Virus record (IMG/VR): IMGVR_UViG_3300046513_000221
Location: 62,001 to 126,000 of that record
Reading direction: 5' to 3' (one strand)
Length of the DNA: 64,000 nucleotides
Shown: positions 43,096 to 62,924 of the stretch, in pieces
How positions within the stretch are numbered: the first letter of the stretch is position 1
How the letters are laid out: each line of letters starts with the position of its first letter
Program-made: the position numbers and the translations under genes
Notes under the pieces: model-generated
What the model was told of the DNA's origin: nothing
What the model saw: only the letters and a program-made list of their open reading frames with translations
Database searches by the model: none

Positions 43096-43326
43096 TTACT
43101 TCTTCCTGTGACTCCAGACAAGGATCATCTTCCCGATGTAGAGCGCCGCTGATATCAGCAAGCCGCGCACCACTACGGTCGGAGTCACCTGCTCCAGAGG
43201 CTCGATTACCCCGCCGTCACTCAACGCGAGTATGAAGAGCATCCCCATAGTCAGGTTGAAGAAGACGACGTGGACGGTGATGATCACTCGCGTGACAAAG
43301 CCGAGTTCGTCCACTTGGATCTTCAT
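43096..43326 (-). CDS. Small 2-TM membrane protein
   Basis: 76 aa, ATGA overlap with the sbcC stop. Confidence 0.65.
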   Translation of the reverse strand: MKIQVDELGFVTRVIITVHVVFFNLTMGMLFILALSDGGVIEPLEQVTPTVVVRGLLISAALYIGKMILVWSHRKK

Positions 43327-46106
43327 TTTTTCGACTTCTTACGATAGTCTGCGATGATCTCCTTGTTCGCCATGAAGCCGGTGTCGTCGGTCTCCACGGA
43401 GCTTCCCGGCAGCAGGATCAGGGCCAGTTCCGCAGCGTGGAACGCGTCGTTGTGGGTGATCATGAAGCACTGCTCGCAGTTCAGGGTGTCAAGCTGCACA
43501 TCCAGAATGTCGATGAAGCGCTTCCGGTTCACGGTGTCGAGTTCCGCGTCGATCTCGTCGAGGTAGACGATGTTGTACTTGCTCTCGTCCTCCTTCTTAC
43601 GCTTGATCGCGGAGCTGGAGATACCGAGGGACAGAGCGCACTTGATGAGCGCCGTCTCACCCTGACTGCAGGACTTGACGTCTTTGTTGTACATGACGTT
43701 GTTCTGGTAGACAGGTACGAGGAAGTCCTCGTCGGAGATGTGGAAGTCGATGAAGAACGACTCACCGAACGCCATGTTGAGCAGATCGTTGGTGGACTCC
43801 TTGATCTCGCCGAGGTACACGCCGAGTACGTACAGCGGCATCCCGGTCTTGATGTCCAGAGTGTCGCGCACGATCATCAGCTTGTCGCGTATGGCGACCA
43901 GAGCGTCCTTGCGCTCCTTGTACTGCGTGATGCGCTCCAGCTTCAGCTTCTCCTTGTTGAGGGAGTCGCTTGTCTCGATCACGATCTCGTCGGCGTTCAC
44001 CTTGCGGATCTTGATCTCCTCCATCTTATCGATGTTGGAATCGCGCTTGGTGATGCTGTCCTTGTTACGCTCGTAGATCTTGTTGAGCGTCTTCAGGCTC
44101 TTGTCGATGTCCTTGATCGAAACCATGTGACCGTAGATGGCGGAGTACAATTCCACGATCTGTTCCTTGGTGTCGATCTCGGTATCAACTGCATCGATCT
44201 TCTCGATGAGGTCGGCCTCCTCGCTCGTCATCGTATTGATCTCTTCACGATGAGTGGCGATACGCTGACGGATGTCAACCAGCAGCTGCTCGGCATTCTG
44301 GAGGTTGTCGATGCGTTCCTTGGTGTTGACCTTGGCGCGCTCGGTATCCTTCATCTTCTGACTCAGGTTGATCTTGGTCACCAGACGACCGAAGTCATAC
44401 TGCTTGCCGATGTCCTCGCCGGAGGACTGGTAGGTGATGCGACCGATCTCGGTGGCGTCGCCCAGACTCAACAGCTCCACCAGATCGCTCTTGGAAGCGG
44501 TGATAGAGTGCATCTCCAGCGACATGTAGACCGACTCGTTGAAGAGCTTGTAGTGACGCTGGACCATCTGCATCATGGTCAGAGTAGCGTGGAGTTCAGC
44601 CAGTTCATCTTCCTTCAACTGAATCTGTTCTTCAACCTTGACCTGCTCGCCGTCCTTCTCCAGTTCCTTCTGGCCGATGCGGTACACCGCGCAGGTACTG
44701 GTCTTGCACATCGCGGTGATGCGACGTACGGCTTCCGAAGCGATCTTATCGTCCTCCAGCTGACGCAGCCGCTTCTTCAGACCGGAGATCTCCTTCTCGG
44801 TAGTCTCGATGAGACCGGAGTACTCGCTGATGTTAGCGTTGAGGGCGCTCCCACCAATGTCGAACAAAACTGATTCAATCACCTCTTGATCGTAGCTGCT
44901 CAGATCGTGTTTAGCCTCGACCAGACGGTTGGCGAAGCGGCTCAGCTCGTTGACGGATGCCGTGGCCTCCTCCAACTCGAAGCTCTCCACCAGCTTCGAG
45001 TCGAACTCGGAGATGGAATTGAAGCGTTCGGTGTGCTGGCGCAGGTTCTCGGTGTGCTCCTGCAGCTGGAGCTTCATGTTGGCGATACTGGCGCTCGTCG
45101 GCGACGAGTACTTACGCTCGTCTGCCTCGGCAGCGGCTTTGTTCTTCGAAGCGTTGTGCTTGTTAGACTGGAGCTTCTCCCGCTCGACGTTCAGCTTGCT
45201 CTGCGTCACGCGCAGTTCCTTCAGCTTCTCGTTGAGGCTCTCGATCTTCTCCTTCAGTTCTTCGGCGGAGATGCCGCGACGCTTGGGGAACTTCTCGTAG
45301 ATGGCCTCCAGCTTGGCCTCCTCACCGTCGCGCTGCTCGATCAGCAGGAGGCGTTGCTCCAGATCGGACGCGAAGGCTTCGAGGTTCTCATCGATCGCCT
45401 CGTTTTCCTTCTGTACGGTACCCAACTCGACCGCGATGGCGTTCGCCTCGGCGGTGTTCTTCTTCAGAGTCTTCGTGAGGATGTCGATCTGCGTGGTGAC
45501 ATCGGCCTCGGAGTCGAGACGACCCAGCTCATCGGTGATGTGCTTGATCTCCTTCCCGGATGCGTTGAACTTATCGTTCACGATCTTGAAGTGGTTGGTG
45601 TACTCTTCGACGCTCGGAGTGAAGCGCTGCATGAACTGCTTGCGTGCGCTGCTGTTCATGTCGATCAGGCTGGTGGAGCCGGAGCCGATGCGGACCAGCT
45701 TGAAGTGCTCGGGCGTCACACCCAGTTCCTTCTCGCACAGTGCCTCGAAGGTGCGCTTACCGCCGTTACCGTTCAGGTTGTGCTCGTCGTCGGTGCCGTT
45801 CTTGAACATGAATGACTTGACCTTGCCACTCTTGTAGAAGTGCTGGATGACGTAGTAGTCCTCGTCCTTCTGGTAATGAATCTCTTTGTAGCCCTCCTTG
45901 CCTTCGAGGATCAGCTCGGTGCGACCGTCGAAGGACTCAGCGAACGGCGTCAGCATGCTCATGGCGGTGCTCTTACCGGATCCGTTCTCGCCGAGGAACA
46001 TGATGTTTCGCTTGTCAGACTCGCGCAGGTCGATCTCGAATTCCGAGATCTTCATCCCGGCCCAGATGCCCTTGAAGTTGACAAGCTTGAAGTATGGAAT
46101 ACGCAT
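43323..46106 (-). CDS. sbcC: SbcC/Rad50-like SMC ATPase
   Basis: GENGSGKST, long coiled coils with a central C-x4-C hook, signature CSQGE, YLDEIDAELD, ITH. Confidence 0.92.
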   Translation of the reverse strand: MRIPYFKLVNFKGIWAGMKISEFEIDLRESDKRNIMFLGENGSGKSTAMSMLTPFAESFDGRTELILEGKEGYKEIHYQKDEDYYVIQHFYKSGKVKSFMFKNGTDDEHNLNGNGGKRTFEALCEKELGVTPEHFKLVRIGSGSTSLIDMNSSARKQFMQRFTPSVEEYTNHFKIVNDKFNASGKEIKHITDELGRLDSEADVTTQIDILTKTLKKNTAEANAIAVELGTVQKENEAIDENLEAFASDLEQRLLLIEQRDGEEAKLEAIYEKFPKRRGISAEELKEKIESLNEKLKELRVTQSKLNVEREKLQSNKHNASKNKAAAEADERKYSSPTSASIANMKLQLQEHTENLRQHTERFNSISEFDSKLVESFELEEATASVNELSRFANRLVEAKHDLSSYDQEVIESVLFDIGGSALNANISEYSGLIETTEKEISGLKKRLRQLEDDKIASEAVRRITAMCKTSTCAVYRIGQKELEKDGEQVKVEEQIQLKEDELAELHATLTMMQMVQRHYKLFNESVYMSLEMHSITASKSDLVELLSLGDATEIGRITYQSSGEDIGKQYDFGRLVTKINLSQKMKDTERAKVNTKERIDNLQNAEQLLVDIRQRIATHREEINTMTSEEADLIEKIDAVDTEIDTKEQIVELYSAIYGHMVSIKDIDKSLKTLNKIYERNKDSITKRDSNIDKMEEIKIRKVNADEIVIETSDSLNKEKLKLERITQYKERKDALVAIRDKLMIVRDTLDIKTGMPLYVLGVYLGEIKESTNDLLNMAFGESFFIDFHISDEDFLVPVYQNNVMYNKDVKSCSQGETALIKCALSLGISSSAIKRKKEDESKYNIVYLDEIDAELDTVNRKRFIDILDVQLDTLNCEQCFMITHNDAFHAAELALILLPGSSVETDDTGFMANKEIIADYRKKSKK

Positions 46107-46132
46107 TTTCTTCCTTTAGATGAAACTATCGA

Positions 46133-46149
46133 TCATTGCTATTATATAT
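46133..46149 (-). promoter_or_regulatory. Early/middle-type promoter ATATATAAT-N5-TGA (sbcC)
   Basis: Motif copy; divergent partner at 46238. Confidence 0.75.
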
Positions 46150-46237
46150 GTCCATACGAGCTTTTGTATAGTGATGCGTCACCTCAACAAGATCCTTTGG
46201 ATCACAGGAAAATGTGTAATTCGAAAGGATTATGCAC

Positions 46238-46254
46238 ATATATAATGGGAATGA
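46238..46254 (+). promoter_or_regulatory. Early/middle-type promoter ATATATAAT-N5-TGA (S8 protease)
   Basis: Motif copy. Confidence 0.75.
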
Positions 46255-46301
46255 ACCATGTTGAGGGATCATCCCTCGAAATCAATTAAAGGAGATACAC
46301 C

Positions 46302-48161
46302 ATGAGTAACGATATCGCATTTCTGCTGTCCACCGCATCCATCAAGTCCACGGATGACGGCGAGCCCGGACGTTTCAAGCTCACCAACGATTCCAAAGAG
46401 AAGATCTACCTCTCGTGGATCGATTTCACTGGCAGCATCAAGCAGTACGCGGTCATTGATCCCGGTCAGAGCTACGTTCAGCTCACCACGCAGACTTCCC
46501 ATGCGTGGCAGGTCAGCAGCGACAGCGGTAACGTCGCTTTCAAGTTCTTCCCAACTGTCTATGGCAACATCGATGTCAAGGGGTCCGGTACGCCGGTCTT
46601 CGAGTCGTTTGCCAACGCCACCGTCCATACCGACATCGGTAACTGGAACACCTACACTGGCTACGGCCTGATCAACGTCGGACGTTCCCTCGGCATCGCC
46701 GACACGGGCGACGACGGCTTCCATCTGGGCGGCAAGAACAACAATGTCGCTCTGGAGCTGATCAACGCACCAGTGGCATGGAAGAACGGCTTCACCGGCA
46801 AGGGCGTCAAGGTGGCGGTGATCGACTCCGGCATCGCCGACAACCCGGAGATCCACGGCAAGATCGTCGATCAGTGGGACTTCCGCGATAACGATTCCGA
46901 TGCTTCTCCGACGAACGGTGCCTACAAGGACCACTCTCTCGGCGTGGCATCGATCATCGCGGCCAATCACGACAACAAGGGCAACGCCCCGGATACGTCC
47001 GGCGTGGCCCCTGATGCGTCCCTGCTGAACGTGCGTGTCTCCAGCCCCGAAGGCGCTCGCGGCGACGACATCGCCAAGGGCATCATCTGGTCGGTGGATC
47101 ACGGTGCTGACGTTCTCTGCATCCCACTGCAGGGTGCCGGTGACGGCTACGACCAGTCCATCCACGATGCTCTGAAGTACGCCGCAGACCACAACGTCGT
47201 GAGCGTGGTGATCGGCGGTAACTTCGGCATCTACGGCGGCTCCGGTATCGGTCTGGCAGCTAAAGAAGGTCTTTGCATCACGGTAGGCAACTACGACGTG
47301 AATGTCGGTGACCCGTTCGGCTCGTCCAACCTTCCCGGCAATACCCCGTTTGACTGGGTGATGGCCTCCTCGACAGGCTACGTACCCAACTCGCACGGCG
47401 GTTACACATTCTACATGGATGGCGGCACCTCGTTCGCTGGTCCGTACGTCGCCGGTCTGGCCGCTCTGCTCGTGCAGAAGTATCCTGACGCTTCCGCGAA
47501 GTTCATCATGGACAAGATCGTCGAAGGTGCGACTGGCGTACCTAACGACGGTTCCTCCCGCACCGGGACTGCGCTGGCCGACAAGTTCATCAACACGAAC
47601 ATCGGCGAGCACTTCTTCGGCAAGGAGGGAATTGACACCGTGTCCTACGGCGGCAATCAGGGCGACTACACCGTAGCGAATACCAACGGTGTCTTCACGG
47701 TGACCGACAACCACACCAAGGTTGTGGACGCATTCTCCAGCGTGGAGCGCATCCAGTTCTCCGACCATGCCGTTGCCCTCGACATCGATGGTAATGCGGG
47801 TCAGGTGTACCGCCTCTACCAAGCGGCGTTCGACCGTAAGCCGGATGTGCAAGGTCTCGGCTTCTGGATCAACGCTATGGACAAGGGCATGACTTTGGAG
47901 CAAGTAGCCAAAGGCTTTCTCGACTCCCCGGAAATGAAGCGGGTCTATGGTGACACGAGCGATAAAGGCTTCATCACCAACCTGTACAGCAACGTGCTCC
48001 ACCGCACCGCCGATCAGGGCGGTTTCAACTGGCACGTTGATAACCTGTCCCACGGCGTTTCCCGCGTGCAGGAGCTGATCGGCTTCAGCGAAAGCGCGGA
48101 GAACGTTGCAAATCTGGTAGGCGTGATCAACCACGGCATTGATTTTGTGCCGGTAATCTAA
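46302..48161 (+). CDS. S8 subtilisin-family protease with N-terminal VHL-beta-like and C-terminal DUF4214 domains
   Basis: VAVIDSG, DHSLGVASII, GGTSFAGPYVAG; N-terminal LTNDS..LSWIDFTG..Y..I.PG....T..SHAW; C-terminal AGQVYRLYQAAFDRKPD..GLGFW..FSESAEN. Confidence 0.9.
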   Translation: MSNDIAFLLSTASIKSTDDGEPGRFKLTNDSKEKIYLSWIDFTGSIKQYAVIDPGQSYVQLTTQTSHAWQVSSDSGNVAFKFFPTVYGNIDVKGSGTPVFESFANATVHTDIGNWNTYTGYGLINVGRSLGIADTGDDGFHLGGKNNNVALELINAPVAWKNGFTGKGVKVAVIDSGIADNPEIHGKIVDQWDFRDNDSDASPTNGAYKDHSLGVASIIAANHDNKGNAPDTSGVAPDASLLNVRVSSPEGARGDDIAKGIIWSVDHGADVLCIPLQGAGDGYDQSIHDALKYAADHNVVSVVIGGNFGIYGGSGIGLAAKEGLCITVGNYDVNVGDPFGSSNLPGNTPFDWVMASSTGYVPNSHGGYTFYMDGGTSFAGPYVAGLAALLVQKYPDASAKFIMDKIVEGATGVPNDGSSRTGTALADKFINTNIGEHFFGKEGIDTVSYGGNQGDYTVANTNGVFTVTDNHTKVVDAFSSVERIQFSDHAVALDIDGNAGQVYRLYQAAFDRKPDVQGLGFWINAMDKGMTLEQVAKGFLDSPEMKRVYGDTSDKGFITNLYSNVLHRTADQGGFNWHVDNLSHGVSRVQELIGFSESAENVANLVGVINHGIDFVPVI

Positions 48162-48171
48162 GGAACTTGAT

Positions 48172-48789
48172 TTGATCGATATCGATAGACCTGATCGTAA
48201 CGGACGCATCTATGATCGTAGTGTCCTGAACGCTCTGATGGCGCAGATTGCCCTTTCCGGCCCCGGTCGTCAGCTTGTGCAAGAAGCTGCTCGCTCGATG
48301 CCGGAAAGGGTGGTGTTCATGACCGCATCACCTCGTAATTCGGGACGATGCTACGCGCACACCATGCACGGCCTGCACCGCCATTGGGATATCCAGCCTT
48401 ACGGACGCTATCACTGGCCCAAGCTGGACTACACCAGTCCAAGTAATCTGGACACGTTTTACGAACGTGGTAGTTTGCAAAATAACCTGAAGAGCGTCAA
48501 TGCTAAGAAGGCACTAGCTGCGGACTTCATCAGCGAGAGTCGTAAGCGCGCCGAGCGTAACAAACTCCGTCAGAAGGTGATGGAGGTACTGGTCAGTATG
48601 AAGACCTGTGGTTGGACCCGTTTCAACAACGAGAACGTTCCTCCTGTTGTTCCTCTGGATGTCACACGGGAAGGACTGCGGATGGGAGTATTCGAAGGAA
48701 AGAGTGTGGGGGAGATGCGAGTCACCAAAAAAGGTAGGAACCTGGTGAATAAACTGACTAAGGAAAGGGAAAGCCATGCAACAAGTTAA
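48172..48789 (+). CDS. Hypothetical protein
   Basis: 205 aa, TTG start, N-terminal DRNGRIY motif. Confidence 0.6.
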   Translation: MIDIDRPDRNGRIYDRSVLNALMAQIALSGPGRQLVQEAARSMPERVVFMTASPRNSGRCYAHTMHGLHRHWDIQPYGRYHWPKLDYTSPSNLDTFYERGSLQNNLKSVNAKKALAADFISESRKRAERNKLRQKVMEVLVSMKTCGWTRFNNENVPPVVPLDVTREGLRMGVFEGKSVGEMRVTKKGRNLVNKLTKERESHATS

Positions 48790-49153
48790 CACGCTGACTC
48801 TGGTCGGCACTCAGCCGTCCCGCTTGACCAAGGCGGTAGAGATCGCTATGAACCCTGAAGTAGACAACGTTCTGAAGCCTCGTAGCTTCACCTTCAGTCG
48901 GGAAGATGGTCTCATCCTGTTCTCCGAAAAGGAAGCGGGTGCGAATGTCTTCCGCTCGCCTGTCAACTCCGGCGACATCGCGGAGATGGCTCGCGAGTGG
49001 CTGAAGACCGAGGATGCGTCCAATGTCTCCTACGAGCAGTGGGAGAAGGAGGGCGTTGACCGCGACGGCTGGAAGGTCTACTGCGGTGCCAATCATCGTG
49101 TGGGCAACTACTCGAACGTGATCTGCGCGATCCGTCCGACTCAGGTCTGCTAA
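48776..49153 (+). CDS. Hypothetical protein
   Basis: 125 aa, overlapping start with RBS. Confidence 0.7.
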   Translation: MQQVNTLTLVGTQPSRLTKAVEIAMNPEVDNVLKPRSFTFSREDGLILFSEKEAGANVFRSPVNSGDIAEMAREWLKTEDASNVSYEQWEKEGVDRDGWKVYCGANHRVGNYSNVICAIRPTQVC

Positions 49154-49163
49154 AGTAGTTTCA

Positions 49164-49276
49164 AGGGGACGATCTCGGTCGTCTCCTGTTGTAAAACCGG
49201 GTATGCCACCGTCCCAAGCGGTACATGCTCGGTAACCCGAAAGGGTTCTAGCACTCCTTAGCTAAAACTAGGGAGT
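49164..49276 (+). ncRNA. Four-hairpin structured intergenic element (leader or sRNA)
   Basis: Four abutting stems with G-U pairs and a GAAA loop, no T tract. Confidence 0.35.
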
Positions 49277-49319
49277 TAACATTCGTGCTGTTCTTAGTAG
49301 AAAAAGAGAGGACACGGTC

Positions 49320-50150
49320 ATGAGCAGTCAGCAACACGCGGGTGAAGGTTCCCAGCAGCTGCAACGAGGGGATACCACCGCACATCAAAGCAGCGTATCG
49401 CAGACCAACGTACTGGTCGCGCGTTTCGACCGTAAGGACTACGATGTGGTTAGGGAGACGGTGAACCGCTTCAGGGCGAGGTTCGCTGATGTGGAGTTCC
49501 ACTTTGTCAAGTCGGAGCTCGGCACGCAGAGGGATTTCCTCTACGTTAACCGGATGCCGGACGGAACTGCGATAGGCGAGTTCTGGGGAATCCATCATGC
49601 CATGATGGCCTCTAAAGAAGCGGGGATTCCACTGAAGCTGGCGGAGACCTCGTTCAAGCCAGTCCTGACTGAGCCTCTAGTCATCAGACCTCCGAGTCTG
49701 GTCCCGGAGGAGTTCATCCATTCGTTCGACAAGAGCATGACGGAGATCTACTCTGAGGCGGCACGTCGCTTCCGGGCTGACAACCCTCATCTCTGGTTCA
49801 AGATCGTCTGGGGCGCAAGCGAGAACGCTCTTGTGGTCTACGGTCGTAATGGTAAGGAGGACATGGAAGACCTCGTCCACTGCGTCCATTACCTCATCGC
49901 CCACCAAAACGGCGATGGCACTTTCGACTGCTACACGCCGATGCATCGGGTCAGGGCTAATGATATTCGTCCGTTCAAGAGTGTATTTGTAAGGCAAAAG
50001 GATTCGCCGATCTATACCGAGTTTCGGTTAGTGTTCGCCGAGGAGCCTACAGAAGAAAAATGGCATGGGGATGCCTTAGCAGTTAACGTGAAGACGGGGG
50101 AGTGCGGCCATCTCTCCAGCTTCAGGTTAGAAGAAGTATTTGCTCCTTAG
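49320..50150 (+). CDS. Hypothetical protein (FHF..FWGIHH family)
   Basis: 276 aa, GAGG RBS. Confidence 0.7.
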   Translation: MSSQQHAGEGSQQLQRGDTTAHQSSVSQTNVLVARFDRKDYDVVRETVNRFRARFADVEFHFVKSELGTQRDFLYVNRMPDGTAIGEFWGIHHAMMASKEAGIPLKLAETSFKPVLTEPLVIRPPSLVPEEFIHSFDKSMTEIYSEAARRFRADNPHLWFKIVWGASENALVVYGRNGKEDMEDLVHCVHYLIAHQNGDGTFDCYTPMHRVRANDIRPFKSVFVRQKDSPIYTEFRLVFAEEPTEEKWHGDALAVNVKTGECGHLSSFRLEEVFAP

Positions 50151-50208
50151 AGAGATAAACCGGTCAAACAAGAGATTACGATGTAAACCTAGAGAAAGGA
50201 ACAGCATT

Positions 50209-50490
50209 GTGATCGAATCGATGACCGATCCGAATGATTCCGTCTGGACTTCCCGTGGGCGTAGGTTCGTAACTAACCTCCTTCCCGGCCAGTTGGAGAC
50301 GTACACCGAGTCAACGAGGGAATTCGAGCGTCGATACCCCGGCGTTCTGTTTCACTTCGGTGCTTCGTCAGTGGGAACACCGGGCGATCTTGGCCTTGAA
50401 GCGAGTTTTCCTCAAGGCCGTTTGCCAGACCTGAATAAGTTCTGGGGAATCCATCATGTGATAGAGAACCAACGATTCAGACGAATCTAG
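50209..50490 (+). CDS. Hypothetical protein, paralog of the N-terminal part of the 49320 ORF
   Basis: GTG 50209 (or ATG 50221) after AAGGA; AACA-N6-TA at 50167-50178; shared FWGIHH. Confidence 0.6.
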   Translation: MIESMTDPNDSVWTSRGRRFVTNLLPGQLETYTESTREFERRYPGVLFHFGASSVGTPGDLGLEASFPQGRLPDLNKFWGIHHVIENQRFRRI

Positions 50491-50494
50491 GATA

Positions 50495-50540
50495 AAAATC
50501 CCTATACCCTTTGCGGGGTATAGGGGTTCTTTTTTTTTTT
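50495..50540. terminator. Bidirectional terminator
   Basis: CCCTATACCC..GGGTATAGGG plus T11. Confidence 0.85.
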
Positions 50541-52238: not shown

Positions 52239-53926
52239 GATATCTCTTCTGGTGAAAATAGACTTGCCCACTCGTCCTCAACACCGGTGATCCCCTTGAG
52301 GGGTTCGGTCTCTTGGAGAGGGAAAGAGTCTGGTGCTGTGCCGTTGAGAGGCCAGCCCCCGGTGAGCGCGGAGGCGTCCATCTCACGGTCGATGTCGTGC
52401 ATGCTCTCGAACAGTACAACGTTGTTTTGCACGTTGTTCTCGTTGAGGCGGTTGACGTAGTCCACGCTACTCCGGCACTCACCGGAGAAGTCGTTGATCT
52501 TGGAGAAATCGGTCTGCACTTCGGAGAGATTACCGAGGAGAGAATTGGATACGCGGTACGTCTCCAGATTCGTGCCAAGATTCTGCGTCAGGATGTTGGA
52601 TTCATCGAAGCCGTAGGTCGAGACCACCTGCGAAGCCAGACCATTAGGAAGGCTACTGGTACTGGATGGGAAGGAGAAAGTCTGACCGGGAAGCTGCTTA
52701 GTCGAATCGATGTATTGAGTGCTGCGATCGTAATACTTGGTCGAAGTATCGACCTTAGCGTCCCGAGCACGGTACATATCGCCGGAGCAGCAGTAGCAAG
52801 CCGTCCTGTCCGAGAAGGAACCCTGATTCAGACCGTACTGCTGGTATGCCATCTGTTGATTAGCCGCCGAGAGGCCGGAGACCCCCATAGCCGTGCTGAT
52901 GAACGGGTCGTAGTTGCCGAACCTGTTGAGGGACTGGGCTGCGATACAGGCACTAACTGATTTGTTGCCAAACGATCCCTGCAAGGAGTTGCCCAGCGCC
53001 GTACCGAGGATACTCGATACACCGTTCTTTGTCATGAACCGACCCACCTCCGGAGAGATACCCGCTAGGGCGCTCTTCATCTGAGGTGGGATCTTGTCGG
53101 TTATACCGTTCACCGTGCTCTGGATCCCGGCGACGCCTTTAGCCGCGTACGATACAGCACCGTTAACGACACTCATAGTGCCGTTGATGGCTCCCATGAC
53201 ACCGGACACCGGTGACTTGAAGTCGAACGATGTACCGCTCGTCTGCGCCAGCTTGGTCAGACCCATAGAGAGCAGACCGAGGACCGTGTCTTCCTTGCAC
53301 TCCATCATCTTGGCGACATTGGAGATCGGATCCTTGATGGTAGGGATGTTGGTGTTAGAGCGAGCGCCGGGTGCGAACCCAGACAACGCATTGCCAGCTG
53401 CCTTGGCGATCTTCACCAGAGAGTTACCGATGCCCTTGATGCAGTCCTTGATGAAGTCTCCGTCCACCTTGGACAGACCGATCTTAAGGTCATCGAAGGC
53501 CATATCGATCTTATCCAAAAGATGACCAATGTTGAGGGACGCCACCTTGTCGGTGAGCTTACCAAGGAAATCGAGACACTCCGCACCCGCCTGTGCGATC
53601 AGGAGACCGGTCTGGATGCCAGTATCCACGATCCCCATCACGGCCTGGACACCAACTCGGGAGTTCAAGAGATTCCTATCGGCAGAGCCGAGAATGGAGC
53701 CCATGTTGCCGAAGTTGATGTTACCGCAGGGGAGGTTGTTGGAGACATACTGCTGTTTTGTGTAGCCACTGTATGGCCGAACGTTGGACTCAGTCGGCAG
53801 CAACTTGCTGAACGGCCTGATGAGTGAGTCCTTGATATCTACTGCTATCATGCTGTGCTCCTTGCACGTCGCATGCAATGAAGTCCAATCCGATATGGAA
53901 TGAACTCCATGAGGCATGACTTTCAT
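52235..53926 (-). CDS. Hypothetical virion (tail/baseplate) protein
   Basis: 563 aa, G/S-rich, divergent from the tape-measure gene, late motif at 53934-53945. Confidence 0.7.
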   Translation of the reverse strand: MKVMPHGVHSISDWTSLHATCKEHSMIAVDIKDSLIRPFSKLLPTESNVRPYSGYTKQQYVSNNLPCGNINFGNMGSILGSADRNLLNSRVGVQAVMGIVDTGIQTGLLIAQAGAECLDFLGKLTDKVASLNIGHLLDKIDMAFDDLKIGLSKVDGDFIKDCIKGIGNSLVKIAKAAGNALSGFAPGARSNTNIPTIKDPISNVAKMMECKEDTVLGLLSMGLTKLAQTSGTSFDFKSPVSGVMGAINGTMSVVNGAVSYAAKGVAGIQSTVNGITDKIPPQMKSALAGISPEVGRFMTKNGVSSILGTALGNSLQGSFGNKSVSACIAAQSLNRFGNYDPFISTAMGVSGLSAANQQMAYQQYGLNQGSFSDRTACYCCSGDMYRARDAKVDTSTKYYDRSTQYIDSTKQLPGQTFSFPSSTSSLPNGLASQVVSTYGFDESNILTQNLGTNLETYRVSNSLLGNLSEVQTDFSKINDFSGECRSSVDYVNRLNENNVQNNVVLFESMHDIDREMDASALTGGWPLNGTAPDSFPLQETEPLKGITGVEDEWASLFSPEEIS

Positions 53927-53933
53927 TGTCGAT

Positions 53934-53970
53934 TATTAAGGTGTTTCCTATGATGCGCAACACATTAGTA
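53934..53970. promoter_or_regulatory. Back-to-back late-type promoters (- 53934-53945; + 53959-53970)
   Basis: AACACCTTAATA and AACACATTAGTA. Confidence 0.7.
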
Positions 53971-54009
53971 ATCGAAATCAAGCAACTTTCTAGCATAGGG
54001 GCTACTAAC

Positions 54010-57000
54010 ATGGCCGGTTTATTCAAGAACATAATGAAGTCCCTGACGACTAAGGTAATCCCTGACATCGCCAAGAACGCATTCCCCACGGTTCAGCAGC
54101 TGAACGAGGAAAGGCGTCAGAACTTTAGAGAAGCTGAAGGTGTAATGGATGAGCTCGGCGTGAAGATGAACTCCTTCAAGGAGAACTTCGCCGGTCTCGG
54201 TACAATCCACAGGAATCTAGCTAAACAGCTGGGTTCCGGCAGCTTCGGCACCTCTCAGGAGGACGCCGACAACGCGATGATGAAGTCGATGTTCGGCATC
54301 GACTTCGACGAACCTATCGGCGGCGCGGATGATTCCGCCGACGGTGCGAAGGGTTCCAAGAAGGTCATCATCAACAATATCAACTCCTCGAAGATGCCTT
54401 CAGGTATCACCGAGGACGGTCTGGGTACCATCCAGTCCATCGCCAAGCAGACGAACGTCAACGCACGCGGTCTGGCCTCCAACGCCAAGATCCTCTCCTC
54501 CATCAACTACAATCTGGGTCTGATGAACGCCTTCCACATCGAGAAGACGTCAGCTTACTACGATCTGTCGCTGGAGTCGATGAAAGGCCTCATGGCCGGT
54601 CAGAAGGAGATGATGGACCAGAATAGGGCCATGGCGGATCACTATAAAGAGATGCAGGAGAACGCACGCCTTGATGCAATGAACCGCCAGCTCGACGTGA
54701 AGCAGGTGCTGAACCCGGCCAACTTCATGAAGCGCATCGCCGAGAACCCGCTCTTCAGCGATCTCGTGATGGGTGCCGCTGGCTCCAAGGTCAAGCAAGC
54801 CATTCAGGATCCTCTCGGTATGGCGGCTTCGCTCGCCGGTACGGCCATCATGCAGAAGTTCGCAGGTGGTCTGATCAACAGCGTGGAGCAGTTCGCCAAA
54901 GACTTGCCTTACATGGCACAGAATAAGTTCGAGAAGTGGTCCGGCTCCCGTGACTTCTCCAAGAGCGGCTTCAGTCTGACGAACGTCCTCGCCACGATCG
55001 GCGACAACCTGAAGCTGAACACCGCCGATGCGCGTGTCCGCATGAATCAGGACAAGGACGGCCCGGTAGCATGGGATGCCAAGGCACGCCGCGCACTGGT
55101 GACGGAGATCCCCGGATACCTCGCCAAGATGCTGCGTGAGCTGGAGGCGACCAACCACTTGATGGCCGACGCGTGGGGAACCAAGCGTCGCAACGTCGAG
55201 CATCAGGTCTACGACGGCATGACCGGATCCTTCACCTACGAGGGTGAGATCAAGAAGCGTCTGAACAAGAACATCAAGGACATCGATCAGGGCCAGCACT
55301 TCGGTGGTCTGGGCAGTCAGGTCGATACTGTTGCTCGCATGGGTAACATGTCCAAGTCCGAGGCCGCTAAGGTCAAGGCGATCATGATGAACATCGGCAA
55401 CTCCAACATGGCTGGCGAGGTCAACCTCCGCTCCAAGGAGAATGTCAAGGCCAACATGGCGAACTACGTCAAACAGACGTACAAGCGCAAAGAAGGTCAG
55501 ACCGACGAGAACTACAACAAGGCCATCGAACGCCGCATCGCAGCTCTGACGACTGGTAAGTCCGGTAAGTCGATTGACAAGTTCATCGGCACACTGCAGT
55601 CCTCCGGCACTGGCGGTAACGCCATTCGTCAGCAGACCCTCGACCGTCTGCTGGGCGAGCTGAACGGCACGTCCGACGCTTCCAAGAAGCAAGAGCTGCA
55701 AGAGGAGTACACCCGTCAAAAGGACATGTTTGACGAGGCAAAGAAGCGCGGTCGTAATGAGCTGGAGAAGACCGAATCGGCATTGAAACGCCATTCGCTC
55801 GACCGCTTCACCGCAGCAGAGCGCTTCGGCAACTCGCAGCGTGACTCCGCGTCCTCCAGTGTCTTCGCTATCAACAACATGTCCGGTCAGATGTCCAAGC
55901 GTCAGATGATCGCGCAGCGTACCAAGATGCCGGATGCCAGCGCCCTCGACAAGCTCGATGCATGGGCAGAGCGTCTGAAGGAACCCTTCGACAAGCTCAA
56001 TGCCTTCTTCAGCAAGTGGTACGGCAAGTTCGAAGTCAAGATGAATCAGGCTATGGACTGGGTCGGAGACAAGGTCAAGAAGGCTTGGGGCTGGATGAGC
56101 GACAAGGCCACCAAGGGCTACAACAAGGCCAAGGACGGCTTGAAGAACCTGAACGAGATGTTCCAGGCCAACATCGTCCTGCCTCTGAAGAAGCGCCTGA
56201 TGGGCGGTGATGAAGACAAGGCCAAGAAGCTCTCCTTCATGAAGGTCATGGAGATCAACTGGAACAAGAACGTCCTCCTGCCGTTCAAGCGCATGCTGCT
56301 CGGCGACGACAAGGATGCCGCCAAGAAGCTGTCGCTCTGGCAGACGATCAAGTTCAGCGCCAACAAGGCCATGCAGCCCGTCAAGGACTGGTTCAACAAA
56401 CAATTCGTGCCTTCGATGAAGGACATGTACAAGGAAGTCTCCGGCGAGGTCAAGAAGTACGCCCTCCAGTTCAAGGACTGGATCGTTAAGGATGTCTTCG
56501 GAGGCGGTAAAGCCTTCTTCAAGGGCATCTTCGGCGACGAAAACATCGCCAAGCTCCGCAAGAATCTGGTCGATCCATTCAAGAATGCCGTGAACAAACT
56601 GACCGACTCGCTCGGCGGTATGCTCAAGTTCTTCGCCCGTATCCCGGTCAACTTCTTCCGTGGTGTCGCAGACACTATCAAGATGAAGCGCTGGAAAAAG
56701 GGTGAGGGTAACTTCTCCGAAGAAGAGATCGAACGCTTCAAGGGTCACGAGGAGCGCGGCTCCGCTTTCGATTGGAAGAACAAAGGCAATCCAGCCAAGA
56801 AGGCTCAGGACGCTACCGCTGGTGTGCGCTCCGAGGCTACTGAAATGGGTGCCAACATCAACGAGGGTCTCGCAGACGGCATGCAGCAGACTCAGGATCA
56901 GGTTCAAGAGCAAGTGGACGAGGTAGCTCACACCAGCATCCTGGACCGTATCAAGAAGGCTCTGGGTATCCATTCTCCTTCCCGCGAGATGATTGCCATC

Positions 57001-60000
57001 GGCGGTCACATCATGGACGGTCTGCGGATCGGCATGGAGAACGGTCGTGACGACCTGCGCAACACCATGCGCGGTATCCACGAGGATATCATCGACGTGG
57101 ATGCACGTGAGGTGTTCCCTATGGCCGGTGGCGGTGATCGCAAGGCCAACGCTGGTGGTTCTGGCAACCGCGCCTCCGGTACTGGTCCTTCCAACATCCT
57201 CGAATCGATCAAGCGCTCGGTGGAAGCCATCGAGAAGACGACCGACAACAACCTGCCAATCATCGCCGACAACACCAAGACCATCATCGACATCCTCAAC
57301 GGTCTCGATCATAGTGGCGGAAATGGCGGCAAGAAGGGTGGTCTCTTCGGTAAGATCAAGGGCTTCTTCACCAACATTATGACCGCACCGATGAAGGTGC
57401 TGAAGGATACCTTTAACAGCCTGAAAGACCTCCCCGGCAAACTGCTCACAGGCATTTCCGGGTTCGCCAAGGACTTCTTCGGCAAGGCCGGTAAGGTAAT
57501 CACCGGACTGGTCGAGACCGTCACTCCGATGATCGGCAACCTCATGGAGGGTGCCGCGAACGTACTGAAGAGTACAACCGAGATGCTGATGACCGGCGCT
57601 AAACGCGTCTTCGATCAGATCGGTCCTATGGCTGAGAAGCTGGGCAAGATGGTTCAGGACGTAGCGACCAAGGCGTTGGAAACGGCGACCAGTCTCGCCA
57701 AGTCGATTGGCAAGGCTCTCAAGCCGATGACCGATGCGGCCATCCAGATCGGTAAGGATCTCCTGACCGGTATGCGTCCTGCGATCTCCGCGCTGACGGC
57801 AACCCTGTCGAACGCGATCGTCGGCCTTGCCAAGTTCGGTAAGAGCCTCTTCGATTTGACCATGAACATCGCCAACAAGCTGCTCGCTAAGGGTGCTGGT
57901 CTGGCCGACAAGCTCATGGGTGGCATCGGCGGTCTCTCGATCGGAGGCTTCGGCAATGGCGGTAGCGCTACCGTGGCGGTGAGTAACTTCTCCGACATGC
58001 GCGGTCACCGTCGCTCGAACCCGCTGTTCGTACATGTGGTCGATGGTCGCGTCCAGACCTACTCCGGCAAGGGCAAGGCCCGTGTTGGCAAGATCGACAA
58101 CGACGAGGGAAGCTTCGGCCTGAAGGGTCTGCTCGGCGGTAAGAAAGACAAGAAGGATGGCGAGGGCGACAGCGATTCGCTGATGGGTGCCGCAGGTGGA
58201 GCACTGGCCGGTACCGCTGGTGCCGCGCTGCTGGGTCGTGGTAAGGCTCTTGTAGGTAAGGGCATGTCCAAGATCGGTGGCTTCCTCGGCTTCAAAGGCA
58301 AGGCTCCTGCTGTTCCAGCAGGTGCCGCTGCCGGTGCTGAGAGCGCGACCGTCAAGGCCGCTGCTGGCACTGCGACCAAGGTTCCGACCGCAGCCGGTGA
58401 AATGGCTGAGACCGCAGCCAAGGGCGAAGCAAGCGCTGCCGCTAAAACCGCATCCAAAGTTCCTACATCCGGCGCTGCCGCTGGTGCTGAGAGCGCGACC
58501 GTCAAGGCCGCGTCCGGCGCAGCAGGTGCTGCTGAGAACGTCGCTGCTGGTGCGGCGAAGTCCGGTGGAGTCATGTCCAAGATCGGTAGTGCTGGCAAAG
58601 GCCTTATGAAGGGCGGAGTCGGTAAGCTGGTCAAGGGCGTGGGTGCTGGTGCTATCGTCAGCATGGGCGGTTCCGCTCTGACCAACCTCTTCACCGAGGA
58701 AGGTTCGAAGACTAACAAACTCCTGAACGCCGTCTTCGGAACGGTGGGTGACGCGGCAACTGGCGCGGCGATCGGTAGCTTCATCCCGGTCATCGGTAAC
58801 GTCGTTGGTGCCGTGGGCGGTGCGCTGTACGGTGCCGCTACCAAACTCATCCCTGCAATCGAGGATGCTTTCAGCGAAGAGATTCAGAGCATGACGACCT
58901 CCTTCTTGGAGTTCCCGGACAAGCTGACCGCATGGATCGATGCACTGCCAGCCAAGGTTGACAAGTTCGCCGAGGACATCCCTAAGAAGCTGCTCTCGTT
59001 GTTCGAGGCTCCTGATGCTGGTGACCTCGATCCGGTGACTGGTCTGCCGAAGGAAGAAAAACCATCTATCCTTTGGAAAATGACCAAGGCGCTGGGTAAT
59101 GCCGGTGTCGCCCTGATCGCAGCCATGCCTAAGCTGGGTATCACTCTTGCCGAGTCCTTCGGTAAGATCCTCGGTTCCGCCTTGATGGGTGCCGTTGGTA
59201 TGCTCGGTAAGGGCGTGACGAGTGTGGTGTTCGGCGTGTCGAACTACTTCGAGGACATGGTCGCAGGTGTCAAGAACTGGGCTGCGTCCACGAAGATCGG
59301 TAGCATGCTGGGCCTGAAGGGTGAGTCCAAGGACGAGGAGAACAATCGCAAGGTTTCTCGTGCCGCGTCTCAGAACGCATACATGGCGAACTACGATGCC
59401 ACTGTTTCGGACCTGTCCTCCAAGGCGGGTAAGCTCGGTGGTCAGATCGGCGGTGCCGTTGGTGCTGTCGCTATGGCCCCGGTGACGGGTGCTGCAGTGC
59501 TCGCTAAGGGTGCTCAAGCCCTGACCGATGATGGTGGTGCGGAGAAGAACCGTAACCGCTACGACGAGGCCATGAAGGCATCCGGTGGTGATGAGAAGAA
59601 GGCTAAGGAGTATGCCAAGACCAAGTTCGGTGGCGACGTTGAGTCCTACTGGAACAAGGGCAAGGATGCTTCTGGTCAAGCCAACAAGGCCGTTAGCGAC
59701 GCTCGCTACCAGAAGTGGCTGATCGCCAACAACGAGAAGTCTGGCCCTGAGTCGCGTGCTCGTTTCGACGCTATGGTCGCATCCGAAGCCGGTGGTAAGG
59801 CCAAGGGTAACTTCGGTAGCAAGGAAGTCAGCGACGCGATCGCTCAGGCCTCCGCTGCGTACGGTCTCGACGTAAGTCTGATGACCAAGATGGCTCTGGT
59901 GGAATCCGGTATGGATCCGAAGGCGACCTCACCAACGGGTGCTAAGGGTCTCTTCCAGTTCGTCACCGGCACCGGTAAGGAGATGGGTCTGAACAGCGAG

Positions 60001-62374: not shown

Positions 62375-62563
62375 ATGCGTAAAACGATTGGAATGGTCGT
62401 GAGCATCATCGTTCTCGGTATCACACTGAACGGTTGCTCCAGCGAACCGAAAAAGAGTACCATGCGTGTCGAACGCGGTGAGGTGACCTCGGCACCCTAC
62501 GGCTACACCGACTACTGTCGGAACCACCCCGAGTACAAGGAGTGCGGCAATGCAGCTAAGTGA
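62375..62563 (+). CDS. Lipoprotein carrying the BTLCP N-terminal P.G...C..HP...C motif
   Basis: Signal peptide plus lipobox LNG-C; AAGGAGG RBS. Confidence 0.75.
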   Translation: MRKTIGMVVSIIVLGITLNGCSSEPKKSTMRVERGEVTSAPYGYTDYCRNHPEYKECGNAAK

Positions 62564-62924
62564 ACTTGACTCCATCAACCGGCGCGTGAACGAGTCGGTT
62601 ACCTACAAGACCGACATCGAGGAGTACAACCAGCTGGAGTTCTGGAACGTGGCCGGTACGGTCGGTGACTGCGAGGACTACTGCCTCCTGAAGATCCACC
62701 GTCTTCTGGCGGCTGGACTCCCGATCTCGGCGATGTCGCTGGTGGTCTGCGCCTATGAGGACGAAGGTCACTGCGTCCTCTTCGTCGAGCTGGACGGCGA
62801 GACCTACGTGCTCGACAACAACAGCGACCAGCTGCTCTTCCCGGAGGACACCCCGTACGAGTGGATCAAGGTCCAGACCCCCGGTACGCCGGAGTGGCGC
62901 GAGATGAAGCTGGTCAAGCGCTAA
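62550..62924 (+). CDS. Transglutaminase-like cysteine protease (BTLCP/LapG family), catalytic domain
   Basis: INRRVN..Y.TD..EFW..GDCEDYCLLK..GHCVL..YVLDN (Cys-His-Asp); own AAGGAG RBS. Confidence 0.88.
   Translation: MQLSELDSINRRVNESVTYKTDIEEYNQLEFWNVAGTVGDCEDYCLLKIHRLLAAGLPISAMSLVVCAYEDEGHCVLFVELDGETYVLDNNSDQLLFPEDTPYEWIKVQTPGTPEWREMKLVKR

What the first reader, a model, noticed from the sequence alone, without database searches (positions are those of the whole stretch)
46238..48161. Host-like VHL-subtilisin-DUF4214 surface protease under a phage early promoter
Seen: intact S8 triad motifs, an N-terminal VHL-beta-like domain, an RTX-adjacent G.DTV.Y..DY segment and a C-terminal DUF4214, with no Sec signal. 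It is driven by a perfect copy of the phage ATATATAAT-N5-TGA motif and a strong RBS. Established: DUF4214 occurs on S-layer and T1SS-secreted proteins of Proteobacteria and is abundant in Oxalobacteraceae and pseudomonads. Inference: the phage uses host type I secretion to place a protease on the cell surface (receptor or S-layer removal, superinfection exclusion, matrix degradation). With the split LapG-like protease, this suggests a surface-remodelling programme and hints at the host group.
Basis: partly seen in the sequence, partly recalled or inferred. Interest (0 to 1): 0.7.

Follow-up and report, generated by a model that had tools for sequence, protein, structure and literature searches.

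The report
Host-derived secreted-type protease in jumbo phage
A 263-kb soil phage carries an intact subtilisin-type protease copied from Massilia-like bacteria and placed behind a phage early promoter; it is probably exported through the host's type I secretion system to act on the cell surface, but export has not been shown.

Summary
ORF 46302-48161 (+) encodes a 619-aa protein with four parts:
- a VHL-beta-like beta-sandwich (aa 1-116). The HMM match is below threshold, but the fold is confirmed and the pVHL hydroxyproline-pocket residues are kept;
- an S8 catalytic domain (D175/H211/N307/S377);
- a small beta module with one degenerate RTX turn;
- a C-terminal DUF4214.

There is no Sec-type N-terminus and the pI is 4.7.

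The gene lies in a complete 263-kb jumbo phage with multisubunit RNA polymerases (nearest known relatives phiR1-37 and AR9), recovered from rhizosphere metagenomes. ATATATAAT-N6-G is one of 42 genome-wide copies of a motif laid out like AR9 virion-RNAP early promoters.

Full-length homologues (46-51% identity) occur only in Oxalobacteraceae (Massilia, Telluria, Duganella, Pseudoduganella). The family was captured separately by a second, unrelated jumbo phage and by integrative islands. In the phage population the gene is under purifying selection (21 synonymous to 3 non-synonymous SNPs).

Type I secretion is supported only indirectly:
- a sister clade carries RTX repeats;
- all five donor-clade genomes tested have one PrtD-type T1SS flanked by DUF4214 proteins;
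- a 2026 preprint shows a T1SS-exported RTX-DUF4214 protein that binds O-antigen.

Export, substrate and phenotype remain untested.

The parts
46238..46253 (+). Predicted virion-RNAP-type early promoter: ATATATAAT (46238-46246), six bases, then G at 46253 as the predicted transcription start.
   Evidence: There are 42 genome-wide copies of ATATATWAT-N6-G. G is enriched only at offset 7: 42 of 61, against 4-18 at other offsets. AR9 early promoters have the same layout (PMC5312081).
46133..46149 (-). Second exact copy of the motif, facing the other way. It drives the SbcC/Rad50-like gene 43323-46106 (-).
   Evidence: PHROG 77 SbcC-like, E 2.7e-57.
46263..46277 (+). Perfect 15-nt palindrome GAGGGATCATCCCTC in the predicted 49-nt leader. 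It could form a hairpin or be a protein-binding site.
   Evidence: It is unique in the 263-kb genome. The leader hairpin has a predicted energy of about -10.6 kcal/mol.
46288..46294 (+). Shine-Dalgarno AAAGGAG, 7 nt before the ATG.
   Evidence: Read directly from the sequence.
46302..48161 (+). Coding sequence of the 619-aa protease (the stop codon is included).
   Evidence: Among variants in three metagenomes, SNPs are 21 synonymous to 3 non-synonymous.
46302..46649 (+). aa 1-116: VHL-beta-like beta-sandwich. W39, Y49, T63, H67 and W69 align with the pVHL hydroxyproline-pocket residues W88, Y98, S111, H115 and W117.
   Evidence: Models; Foldseek against PDB and AFDB; profile against PDB.
46734..47540 (+). 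aa 145-413: subtilase (S8) catalytic domain with D175, H211, N307 and S377.
   Evidence: Pfam, alignment, Foldseek matches to thermitase and subtilisins at E about 5e-17.
47553..47777 (+). aa 418-492: small beta module with one degenerate RTX-type turn (GKEGIDTV; family consensus GGAGxDTV).
   Evidence: Secondary structure of the model, alignment. PF00353 gives no hit.
47793..48158 (+). aa 498-609: helical DUF4214 domain, followed by the 10-residue tail NHGIDFVPVI (an acidic residue, then hydrophobic residues).
   Evidence: Pfam, model, C-terminal comparison.
48172..50490 (+). Four same-strand ORFs of unknown function (48172-48789, 48776-49153, 49320-50150, 50140-50490), probably co-transcribed with the protease.
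   Evidence: No Pfam, PHROG or Atlas match. In 48172-48789, 11 of 14 listed SNPs fall at third codon positions.
50497..50537 (.). Strong bidirectional intrinsic terminator (14-bp stem followed by a T run) that closes the five-gene unit.

Best explanation
Shown:
- The gene is an intact subtilase maintained by selection. It belongs to a family otherwise confined to Oxalobacteraceae of the Massilia group.
- It was captured by a phiR1-37/AR9-like jumbo phage and has partly adopted the phage's base composition.
- It is the first gene of a five-gene unit behind a promoter of the type that virion RNA polymerases of such phages use for early genes.

Inferred, in order of decreasing support:
1. The protein is made early in infection in the cytoplasm.
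2. It leaves the cell without Sec, through the host's resident PrtD-type type I secretion system. Its acidic, cysteine-poor chain, RTX remnant and C-terminal region would serve as the export signal.
3. The DUF4214 domain holds it on the envelope (LPS O-antigen or the S-layer anchoring site), as reported for the DUF4214 protein Psh.
4. There the S8 domain cleaves a surface protein, with the VHL-like domain acting as a proline- or hydroxyproline-peptide recognition module. The result is a changed cell surface, either excluding other phages or removing a protective layer.
For: Identity and integrity:
- Pfam and fold matches.
- Conserved triad.
- 21:3 synonymous to non-synonymous SNPs and no indels in three rhizosphere metagenomes.

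Origin:
- All nine genome loci are Oxalobacteraceae, and more than 75 full-length homologues were found.
- The gene's GC is 58.5% against 55.2% for the phage, while chromosomal copies are about 67%.

Repeated capture by mobile elements:
- A second jumbo-phage contig of 322 kb (L007; GC 45.4% over the 21.9-kb locus read) carries a copy.
- The AU test rejects a single phage clade, p 1e-15.
- Integrase islands L002, L003 and L021 also carry copies.

Early promoter:
-, and PMC5312081.

Export route:
- No Sec-type N-terminus anywhere in the family.
- pI 4.74, with a family median of 4.64.
- A sister clade has the same S8 core fused to RTX repeats (PF00353).
- Each of 5 donor-clade genomes has exactly one PrtD-family ABC gene above the curated cut-off. 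In 4 of the 5 a 695-902 aa protein with an N-terminal DUF4214 sits immediately upstream; in the fifth a 1452-aa one lies about 2 kb upstream. Further DUF4214 genes lie within 19 kb.
- Psh, an RTX-DUF4214 protein, is exported by a T1SS, binds O-antigen and blocks phages (preprint 10.64898/2026.09.02.748959).
- The phage also carries a LapG-like periplasmic cysteine protease gene with a lipoprotein signal.
Against: - No copy of the protease gene, in phage or bacterium, lies next to T1SS genes, and the phage encodes no PrtD homologue.
- PF00353 does not hit this protein; only one degenerate RTX turn remains.
- T1SS C-terminal signals cannot be recognised by sequence, so the key step is untested.
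- The five donor genomes are related, so the conserved T1SS-DUF4214 locus counts as roughly one observation.
- The anchoring role of DUF4214 rests on a single preprint in another bacterial class.
- The host of the phage is unknown, and there are no RNA or protein data.
- S8 enzymes usually need a propeptide, and none is recognisable.
Confidence: 0.5

Rival explanations
1. It is an intracellular protease. The protein stays in the cytoplasm and cleaves host or competing-element proteins early in infection, for host takeover or counter-defence. The VHL-like domain would act as substrate receptor, and DUF4214 would be inherited baggage or a protein-binding module.
For: - There is no signal peptide and the promoter is of the early type.
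- The gene is not linked to T1SS genes anywhere.
- The RTX element is degenerate.
- Bacterial VHL-beta domains can be cytoplasmic (PMC7736814).
- Bacillus jumbo phages carry 'intracellular serine protease' genes.
Against: - DUF4214 is typical of exported proteins and clusters with the T1SS locus in the donor clade.
- The sister clade carries RTX repeats.
- The family is uniformly acidic.
- An unrestrained broad-spectrum subtilase in the cytoplasm would be hazardous to the bacteria that carry it on their chromosomes.
Confidence: 0.25
2. It is a lysis-released enzyme. The protease accumulates in the cell and is freed only at lysis. It then degrades S-layer, matrix or surface proteins of neighbouring cells, helped by DUF4214 binding to their envelopes, so that progeny phages can adsorb.
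For: - The DUF4214 and S8 architecture suits an extracellular role.
- This route needs no export system.
- Related Massilia strains form biofilms.
Against: - An early-type promoter fits poorly with an enzyme needed only after lysis.
- Chromosomal homologues in non-lysing bacteria must have an export route of their own.
Confidence: 0.15
3. It is a virion-associated protease, such as a tail or ejected protein that digests a surface layer at adsorption.
For: - Tail genes lie a few kb downstream (53926-60927, 61010-62365).
- PHROG 3677 contains long phage proteases.
Against: - The gene sits in a separate unit, divergent from a recombination gene, behind an early-type promoter and closed by its own terminator.
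- Its relatives are ordinary chromosomal bacterial genes.
- No structural-protein domain is present.
Confidence: 0.05
4. It is a passenger gene without function in the phage, or an assembly chimera.
For: The phage is known only from metagenome assemblies.
Against: - One 49.9-kb contig spans the region without a mismatch.
- Variant contigs from two other samples keep the frame with 21:3 synonymous to non-synonymous changes.
- The phage-specific promoter and ribosome-binding site abut the gene.
Confidence: 0.02

Closest known systems
Chromosomal 'S8 family serine peptidase / DUF4214 domain-containing protein' of Massilia, Telluria, Duganella and Pseudoduganella (for example Massilia agilis and Pseudoduganella flava; the latter is auto-annotated as 'von Hippel-Lindau disease tumor suppressor protein')
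   Same: Collinear over the full length, with the same four modules, the same catalytic residues and no signal peptide. Identity is 46-51%.
   Different: The phage copy sits behind a phage early-type promoter and has lower GC. Its RTX turn is degenerate (GKEGIDTV against GGAGxDTV). None of these bacterial proteins has been characterised, so they supply ancestry but not function.
Psh of Pseudomonas putida KT2440 (RTX-DUF4214 protein; preprint 10.64898/2026.09.02.748959)
   Same: Both have a C-terminal DUF4214, no Sec signal, and a proposed or shown route through an AprD/PrtD-type T1SS. Both are relevant to phage-surface interactions.
   Different: Psh has a long N-terminal RTX domain and no enzyme domain. 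It is a host defence protein encoded next to T1SS and O-antigen genes. Here an S8 protease and a VHL-like domain replace the RTX domain, the gene is phage-borne, and it is not linked to T1SS genes.
T1SS-secreted proteases of the AprA/PrtA/serralysin type (general knowledge, not tested here)
   Same: Both are acidic extracellular proteases lacking a Sec signal, with Ca-binding glycine-rich repeats before a C-terminal signal that ends in an acidic residue followed by hydrophobic residues.
   Different: Those are M10 metalloproteases with several RTX repeats, encoded beside their transporter. This is a serine protease with one degenerate repeat and a DUF4214 at the C-terminus.
Subtilisin-like proteases of phages (PHROG 3677; Bacillus phages BMBtp16, FADO and pW2; Agrobacterium jumbo phage Atu_ph07 'extracellular serine proteinase')
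   Same: They share the S8 catalytic domain in a phage genome.
   Different: Only the catalytic core matches, at 26-34% identity. None has the VHL-like or DUF4214 modules, and they are not close relatives.
pVHL beta domain (PDB 1VCB, 1LM8 and others)
   Same: Same beta-sandwich fold. The residues aligned with the hydroxyproline pocket (W88, Y98, S111, H115, W117) are kept as W, Y, T, H, W.
   Different: There is no alpha domain or elongin-binding box. Sequence similarity is below Pfam's threshold. The ligand is unknown, and the domain is fused to a protease.
Early (virion RNAP) promoters of AR9, phiKZ and phiR1-37
   Same: An extended AT-rich conserved element with a conserved start base at a fixed distance. 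AR9 has AAATATATATTAT-(6N)-G; this phage has ATATATWAT-(6N)-G. The phage encodes multisubunit RNAP subunits, and its beta-like subunit is 39.5% identical to that of phiR1-37.
   Different: The core differs by one base from AR9. No transcript data exist for this phage.
EBPR siphovirus 2 gp15 (annotated 'protease')
   Same: A phage protein with a DUF4214 domain, encoded among non-structural genes.
   Different: Its DUF4214 is N-terminal. No S8 or other protease domain is recognised by Pfam, and the phage type is different.

Membership tests
Peptidase S8 (subtilase) | Profile match above the curated threshold | tested here: met
   PF00082 scores 103.5 bits against a cut-off of 21.8, over aa 166-413.
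Peptidase S8 (subtilase) | Catalytic Asp-His-Ser in that order, plus the oxyanion Asn | tested here: met
   D175, N307 invariant; H211, S377 nearly invariant in 42 sequences.
Peptidase S8 (subtilase) | Subtilisin alpha/beta fold | tested here: met
   Foldseek matches thermitase and subtilisins at E about 5e-17, target TM 0.78-0.85.
Peptidase S8 (subtilase) | N-terminal I9-type propeptide (usual in secreted subtilisins, not obligatory) | tested here: not met
   No I9 hit. The N-terminal domain has the VHL-beta fold instead.
DUF4214 (PF13946) | Profile match above the curated threshold, and a helical domain | tested here: met
   98.5 bits against 23.2, in two stretches. The model has eight helices at aa 498-609.
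VHL beta domain (PF01847) | Profile match above the curated threshold | tested here: not met
   15.4 bits against 21, E 0.019. The family profile against PDB finds only pVHL, but at E 0.015.
VHL beta domain (PF01847) | pVHL-type beta-sandwich fold | tested here: met
   The top 50 PDB matches are all pVHL, best E 3e-6, TM about 0.49 over about 90 residues. Many bacterial VHL-beta proteins appear in AFDB.
VHL beta domain (PF01847) | Hydroxyproline-pocket residues (pVHL W88, Y98, S111, H115, W117; the pocket identity is from general knowledge) | tested here: met
   An ungapped profile alignment places W39, Y49, T63, H67 and W69 at those positions. Binding itself was not tested.
VHL beta domain (PF01847) | Alpha domain / elongin C box of pVHL | tested here: not met
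   Matches cover the beta domain only. After aa 116 comes a linker and then the S8 domain.
Type I secretion substrate | No N-terminal Sec/Tat signal; acidic, cysteine-poor chain | tested here: met
   Inspection of the N-terminus; pI 4.74; 2 Cys; family pI 4.07-5.03. No dedicated signal-peptide predictor was available.
Type I secretion substrate | RTX nonapeptide repeats (PF00353) | tested here: not met
   No PF00353 hit. One degenerate turn lies at aa 441-448. Sister clade P0080-P0094 and member P0026 do carry PF00353.
Type I secretion substrate | Genetic linkage to ABC, MFP and OMP export genes | tested here: not met
   No T1SS genes lie next to the protease gene in the window, L004, L006 or L007, and the phage has none. 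As a class, DUF4214 proteins do flank the only PrtD-type locus in 5 of 5 donor-clade genomes.
Type I secretion substrate | Functional uncleaved C-terminal secretion signal; export dependent on the ABC transporter | not testable with these tools
   The tail ...IDFVPVI is an acidic residue followed by hydrophobic residues. This is only suggestive.
Virion-RNAP early promoter of multisubunit-RNAP jumbo phages | The phage encodes multisubunit RNAP subunits | tested here: met
   ORFs 21922-26109 and 17096-18946(-) match phage RNAP beta PHROGs (E 0 and 2e-66). The first is 39.5% identical to phiR1-37 g099.
Virion-RNAP early promoter of multisubunit-RNAP jumbo phages | A conserved AT-rich element at a fixed distance from a conserved start base, repeated across the genome upstream of genes | tested here: met
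   42 of 61 near-matches have G at offset 7, against 4-18 at other offsets. Most lie 15-120 nt upstream of an ORF with a Shine-Dalgarno sequence.
Virion-RNAP early promoter of multisubunit-RNAP jumbo phages | Transcripts start there early and independently of protein synthesis | not testable with these tools
   No RNA run holds this phage.
Psh-like T1SS surface shield | N-terminal RTX domain plus C-terminal DUF4214, encoded near T1SS and O-antigen genes | tested here: not met
   Only the C-terminal DUF4214 is shared.

The most novel reading that the evidence does not exclude
A lytic jumbo phage uses a resident host type I secretion system as an early-infection delivery route. It exports a captured protease that docks on the O-antigen or S-layer anchoring site through DUF4214 and cuts surface proteins. 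This would either close the cell to competing phages or strip a Psh- or S-layer-type shield. Two unrelated jumbo phages and several integrative islands captured the same family separately, which would mark it as a recurrent weapon in conflicts between mobile elements in Oxalobacteraceae. The VHL-like domain would be a bacterial proline- or hydroxyproline-peptide reader that directs a protease.
Probability: 0.3. Interest if true: 0.8.

Novelty: new variant of a known kind. Interest (0 to 1): 0.55.

Why it matters
Phages are known to carry host-derived accessory genes, including subtilases. I found no described case of a phage protein exported through the host's type I secretion system to remodel the cell surface.

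DUF4214 has just been linked experimentally to O-antigen binding and phage resistance. A phage-borne protease with the same module makes that link testable from the phage side.

Repeated capture of this family by unrelated mobile elements, together with purifying selection, argues that it benefits them.

The conserved hydroxyproline-pocket residues in a bacterial VHL-like domain fused to a protease offer a concrete entry to the unknown function of prokaryotic VHL-beta domains.

The gene also points to Massilia-group bacteria as host or donor for an uncultured 263-kb rhizosphere phage.

Tried and rejected
- Megablast of 6 kb around the gene against GenBank phages: no match.
- tblastn against phages: only S8-core hits at 26-34% identity, mostly Bacillus phages, plus one DUF4214-only hit.
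- Pattern scans of IMG/VR with the protease and with the SbcC-like neighbour: no relatives. I therefore could not compare a related phage that lacks the gene to define the insertion.
- Flanking genes of the closest homologues (L002, L003) share nothing with the window, so this is a single-gene transfer and not a module.
- The early-promoter motif is absent from L002, L003 and L007, so those elements are not relatives of this phage.
- Pfam, PHROG and Atlas searches of the four downstream ORFs gave nothing.
- A homologue search with the LapG-like piece returned only itself, so it adds no information on the host.
- A sigma-70 scan finds no -35/-10 promoter on the + strand before the gene. This fits a phage-polymerase promoter and argues against a host-type one.
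- Recent transfer was rejected. GC3 (0.77) and GC (58.5%) are close to phage values, against about 67% GC in Massilia chromosomes.
- A single origin of the two jumbo-phage copies was rejected by the AU test. The group was named after the tree had been seen.
- I did not try complex prediction with the T1SS ABC protein. Such signals are transient and a score would not be informative.
Full report
**What is there**

The window is bases 62001-126000 of a complete 263,413-bp virus record with direct terminal repeats. ORF 46302-48161 (+) encodes 619 aa.

Pfam gives three matches:
- Peptidase_S8, aa 166-413, 103.5 bits;
- DUF4214, 98.5 bits, two stretches;
- VHL beta domain, sub-threshold at 15.4 bits against a 21-bit cut-off.

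An AlphaFold2 model built on 42 homologues (mean pLDDT 89.4) resolves four modules:
- a beta-sandwich at aa 1-116;
- the catalytic domain at aa 145-413;
- a small beta module at aa 418-492;
- an eight-helix domain at aa 498-609.

The whole model matches thermitase and subtilisins (E about 5e-17). D175 and N307 are invariant, and H211 and S377 nearly so, across the family.

A separate model of aa 1-136 (pLDDT 86) has pVHL as all of its top 50 PDB matches (best E 3e-6, TM about 0.49). It also matches many bacterial 'VHL beta domain' proteins in AFDB. A profile of the family's N-termini finds only pVHL in the PDB (E 0.015). The ungapped alignment places W39, Y49, T63, H67 and W69 on pVHL W88, Y98, S111, H115 and W117. 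From general knowledge, those residues form the hydroxyproline pocket.

The VHL call is confirmed by fold and key residues but not by the HMM threshold.

The N-terminus has no signal-peptide features. The protein is acidic (pI 4.74) with two cysteines, and the family median pI is 4.64. The 'RTX-adjacent' segment is one degenerate RTX turn, and PF00353 does not hit.

**The phage and the promoter**

ORFs 21922-26109 and 17096-18946(-) are multisubunit RNAP beta-like subunits. The first is 39.5% identical over 99% of its length to g099 of Yersinia phage phiR1-37; AR9, PBS1 and staphylococcal jumbo phages follow.

Genome-wide, ATATATAAT with up to one mismatch occurs 61 times. In 42 of these a G lies exactly 7 nt downstream, while every other offset has 4-18 G.

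AR9 early promoters are AAATATATATTAT-(6N)-G(+1). That paper states that virion-RNAP promoters of phiKZ-related phages are extended AT-rich elements with a conserved start 6 nt downstream (PMC5312081).

The copy at 46238-46246 predicts:
- a start at G46253;
- a 49-nt leader holding a unique 15-nt palindrome (46263-46277);
- AAAGGAG at 46288-46294;
- the ATG at 46302.

A second exact copy faces the other way and serves the SbcC/Rad50-like gene 43323-46106(-). No sigma-70-type promoter precedes the gene on the + strand. A strong terminator at 50497-50528 closes a run of five + strand ORFs.

The early-promoter reading is therefore well supported by analogy, but no transcript data exist.

**Origin**

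Full-length homologues at 46-51% identity are numerous. Where named, they are Massilia, Telluria, Duganella, Pseudoduganella or 'Oxalobacteraceae bacterium OM1'. All nine loci in one-genome-per-species GTDB contigs are Oxalobacteraceae.

In Pseudoduganella flava and Massilia agilis the gene is an ordinary chromosomal gene with GC equal to its flanks, about 67%.

The closest relatives (56-64% identity) sit on two related integrative islands of about 54% GC. One has an integrase and a methyltransferase; the other has a repressor-like gene. These islands share only the protease with the window.

A further copy lies on a 322,570-bp contig (L007; GC 45.4% over the 21.9-kb locus read) with phage hallmarks: Peptidase_S80, densely packed small ORFs, and a CCA-adding enzyme. 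That contig shares only one other gene with this phage. In the tree the two jumbo-phage copies fall in different well-supported clades. Forcing them together costs 233 log-likelihood units (AU p 1e-15). The caveat is that the group was named after the tree had been seen.

An RTX-bearing sister protein sits on a PrimPol/VapE/integrase island.

In the window, L002, L003 and L007 the gene's GC exceeds its flanks by 2-3 points. This fits import from a GC-rich donor followed by amelioration. On the RTX island L021 the gene is instead lower in GC than its flanks (47.4% against 59.3%).

**Is it functional in the phage?**

Three rhizosphere metagenomes hold the region:
- one contig is identical;
- two hold variants about 98-99% identical with no indels.

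Of 24 listed SNPs inside the gene, 21 are synonymous. The downstream ORF 48172-48789 also varies mainly at third codon positions, in 11 of 14 listed SNPs.

**Export route**

The evidence is indirect.
- The whole family lacks a Sec-type N-terminus and is acidic.
- A sister clade has the same S8 core (39-47% identity) followed by RTX repeats.
- Each of five donor-clade genomes has exactly one PrtD-family ABC gene above NCBIfam's cut-off (766-775 bits).
- In Massilia solisilvae that gene is followed by HlyD and TolC-like genes and preceded by an 891-aa protein with an N-terminal DUF4214.
- An HMM of the phage-family DUF4214 finds the same arrangement in all five genomes, plus further DUF4214 genes within 19 kb.
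- DUF4214 is greatly expanded in these genomes, with 23-39 stretches in each of the four tested.
- A 2026 preprint reports that Psh, an RTX-DUF4214 protein of P. putida, is exported by a T1SS, binds O-antigen and confers broad phage resistance.

Against this:
- the protease gene itself is never adjacent to T1SS genes;
- the phage has no PrtD homologue;
- the five genomes are related;
- C-terminal T1SS signals cannot be recognised from sequence.

I put T1SS export at about 0.55, and the specific surface-remodelling outcome lower.

**Comparison with known systems**

The catalytic core is a standard subtilase, and phage subtilases are known. None of them shares the flanking modules. DUF4214 proteins occur in phages, but I found none with this architecture.

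The nearest functional analogue for the C-terminal half is Psh. The nearest for export logic are AprA-type T1SS proteases (general knowledge). The N-terminal domain resembles the pVHL beta domain without the alpha domain. The function of prokaryotic VHL-beta domains is stated to be unknown (PMC7736814).

**Verdict**

This is a host-derived accessory gene of an uncharacterised Oxalobacteraceae protease family. It is firmly domesticated by a jumbo phage as an early gene, with a credible but unproven type I secretion and surface-anchoring mode of action.

Noticed in passing
window 62375-62563 and 62550-62924 (+): The LapG-like (Peptidase_C93) gene is split into two overlapping frames. The first piece (62 aa) starts with a lipoprotein-type signal (LNGC) and the first few domain positions. 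The second piece (124 aa, 107 bits) holds the rest of the domain. The same frame arrangement, with no indels, is present in contigs from three metagenomes, so it is not an assembly error. Whether it is a programmed frameshift, two genes or a decayed gene is open.
   Followed up: partly
whole genome; for example window 7999(-), 16164(-), 30876(-), 35289(+), 36359(+): There are 42 predicted early promoters (ATATATWAT-N6-G). Many predicted transcripts begin with a stable hairpin whose stem starts at or within 1-2 nt of the predicted +1 G. I made no statistical comparison with controls.
   Followed up: partly
window 49320-50150 and 50140-50490 (+): The last two ORFs of the protease unit appear to share an N-terminal region (both contain ...FHF...G(T)...FWGIHH...), which suggests paralogues. 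Neither has a database match.
   Followed up: no
L007 9187-9822 and own genome 5467-6114 (-), outside the window: The only other gene shared between the second jumbo phage (322 kb) and this phage (44% identity) lies directly upstream of the protease in L007 but about 100 kb away from it here. Its function is unknown.
   Followed up: no
L019 5515-13072; L020, L022, L023, L024: Five Massilia-group genomes share a conserved locus: a large (695-1452 aa) protein with an N-terminal DUF4214, followed by PrtD-HlyD-TolC genes. This resembles an S-layer/T1SS arrangement of the RsaA type. More DUF4214 genes lie nearby.
   Followed up: partly
L021 10001-12166: The RTX-bearing sister protease sits on a PrimPol/VapE/integrase island. 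Unlike the other mobile copies, its GC (47.4%) is far below that of its flanks (59.3%).
   Followed up: no
window 21922-26109: The nearest known phages by RNAP beta-like subunit are phiR1-37, AR9, PBS1 and staphylococcal jumbo phages. From general knowledge, several of these have uracil-containing DNA. I did not check whether this phage carries the corresponding genes.
   Followed up: no
window 46107-46301: This 195-bp AT-rich intergenic region (GC about 44%) holds two exact, divergent copies of the early-promoter motif 90 bp apart. No listed SNP falls between 46068 and 46424 in the two variant populations, although 28 SNPs of the stretch were not shown.
   Followed up: partly
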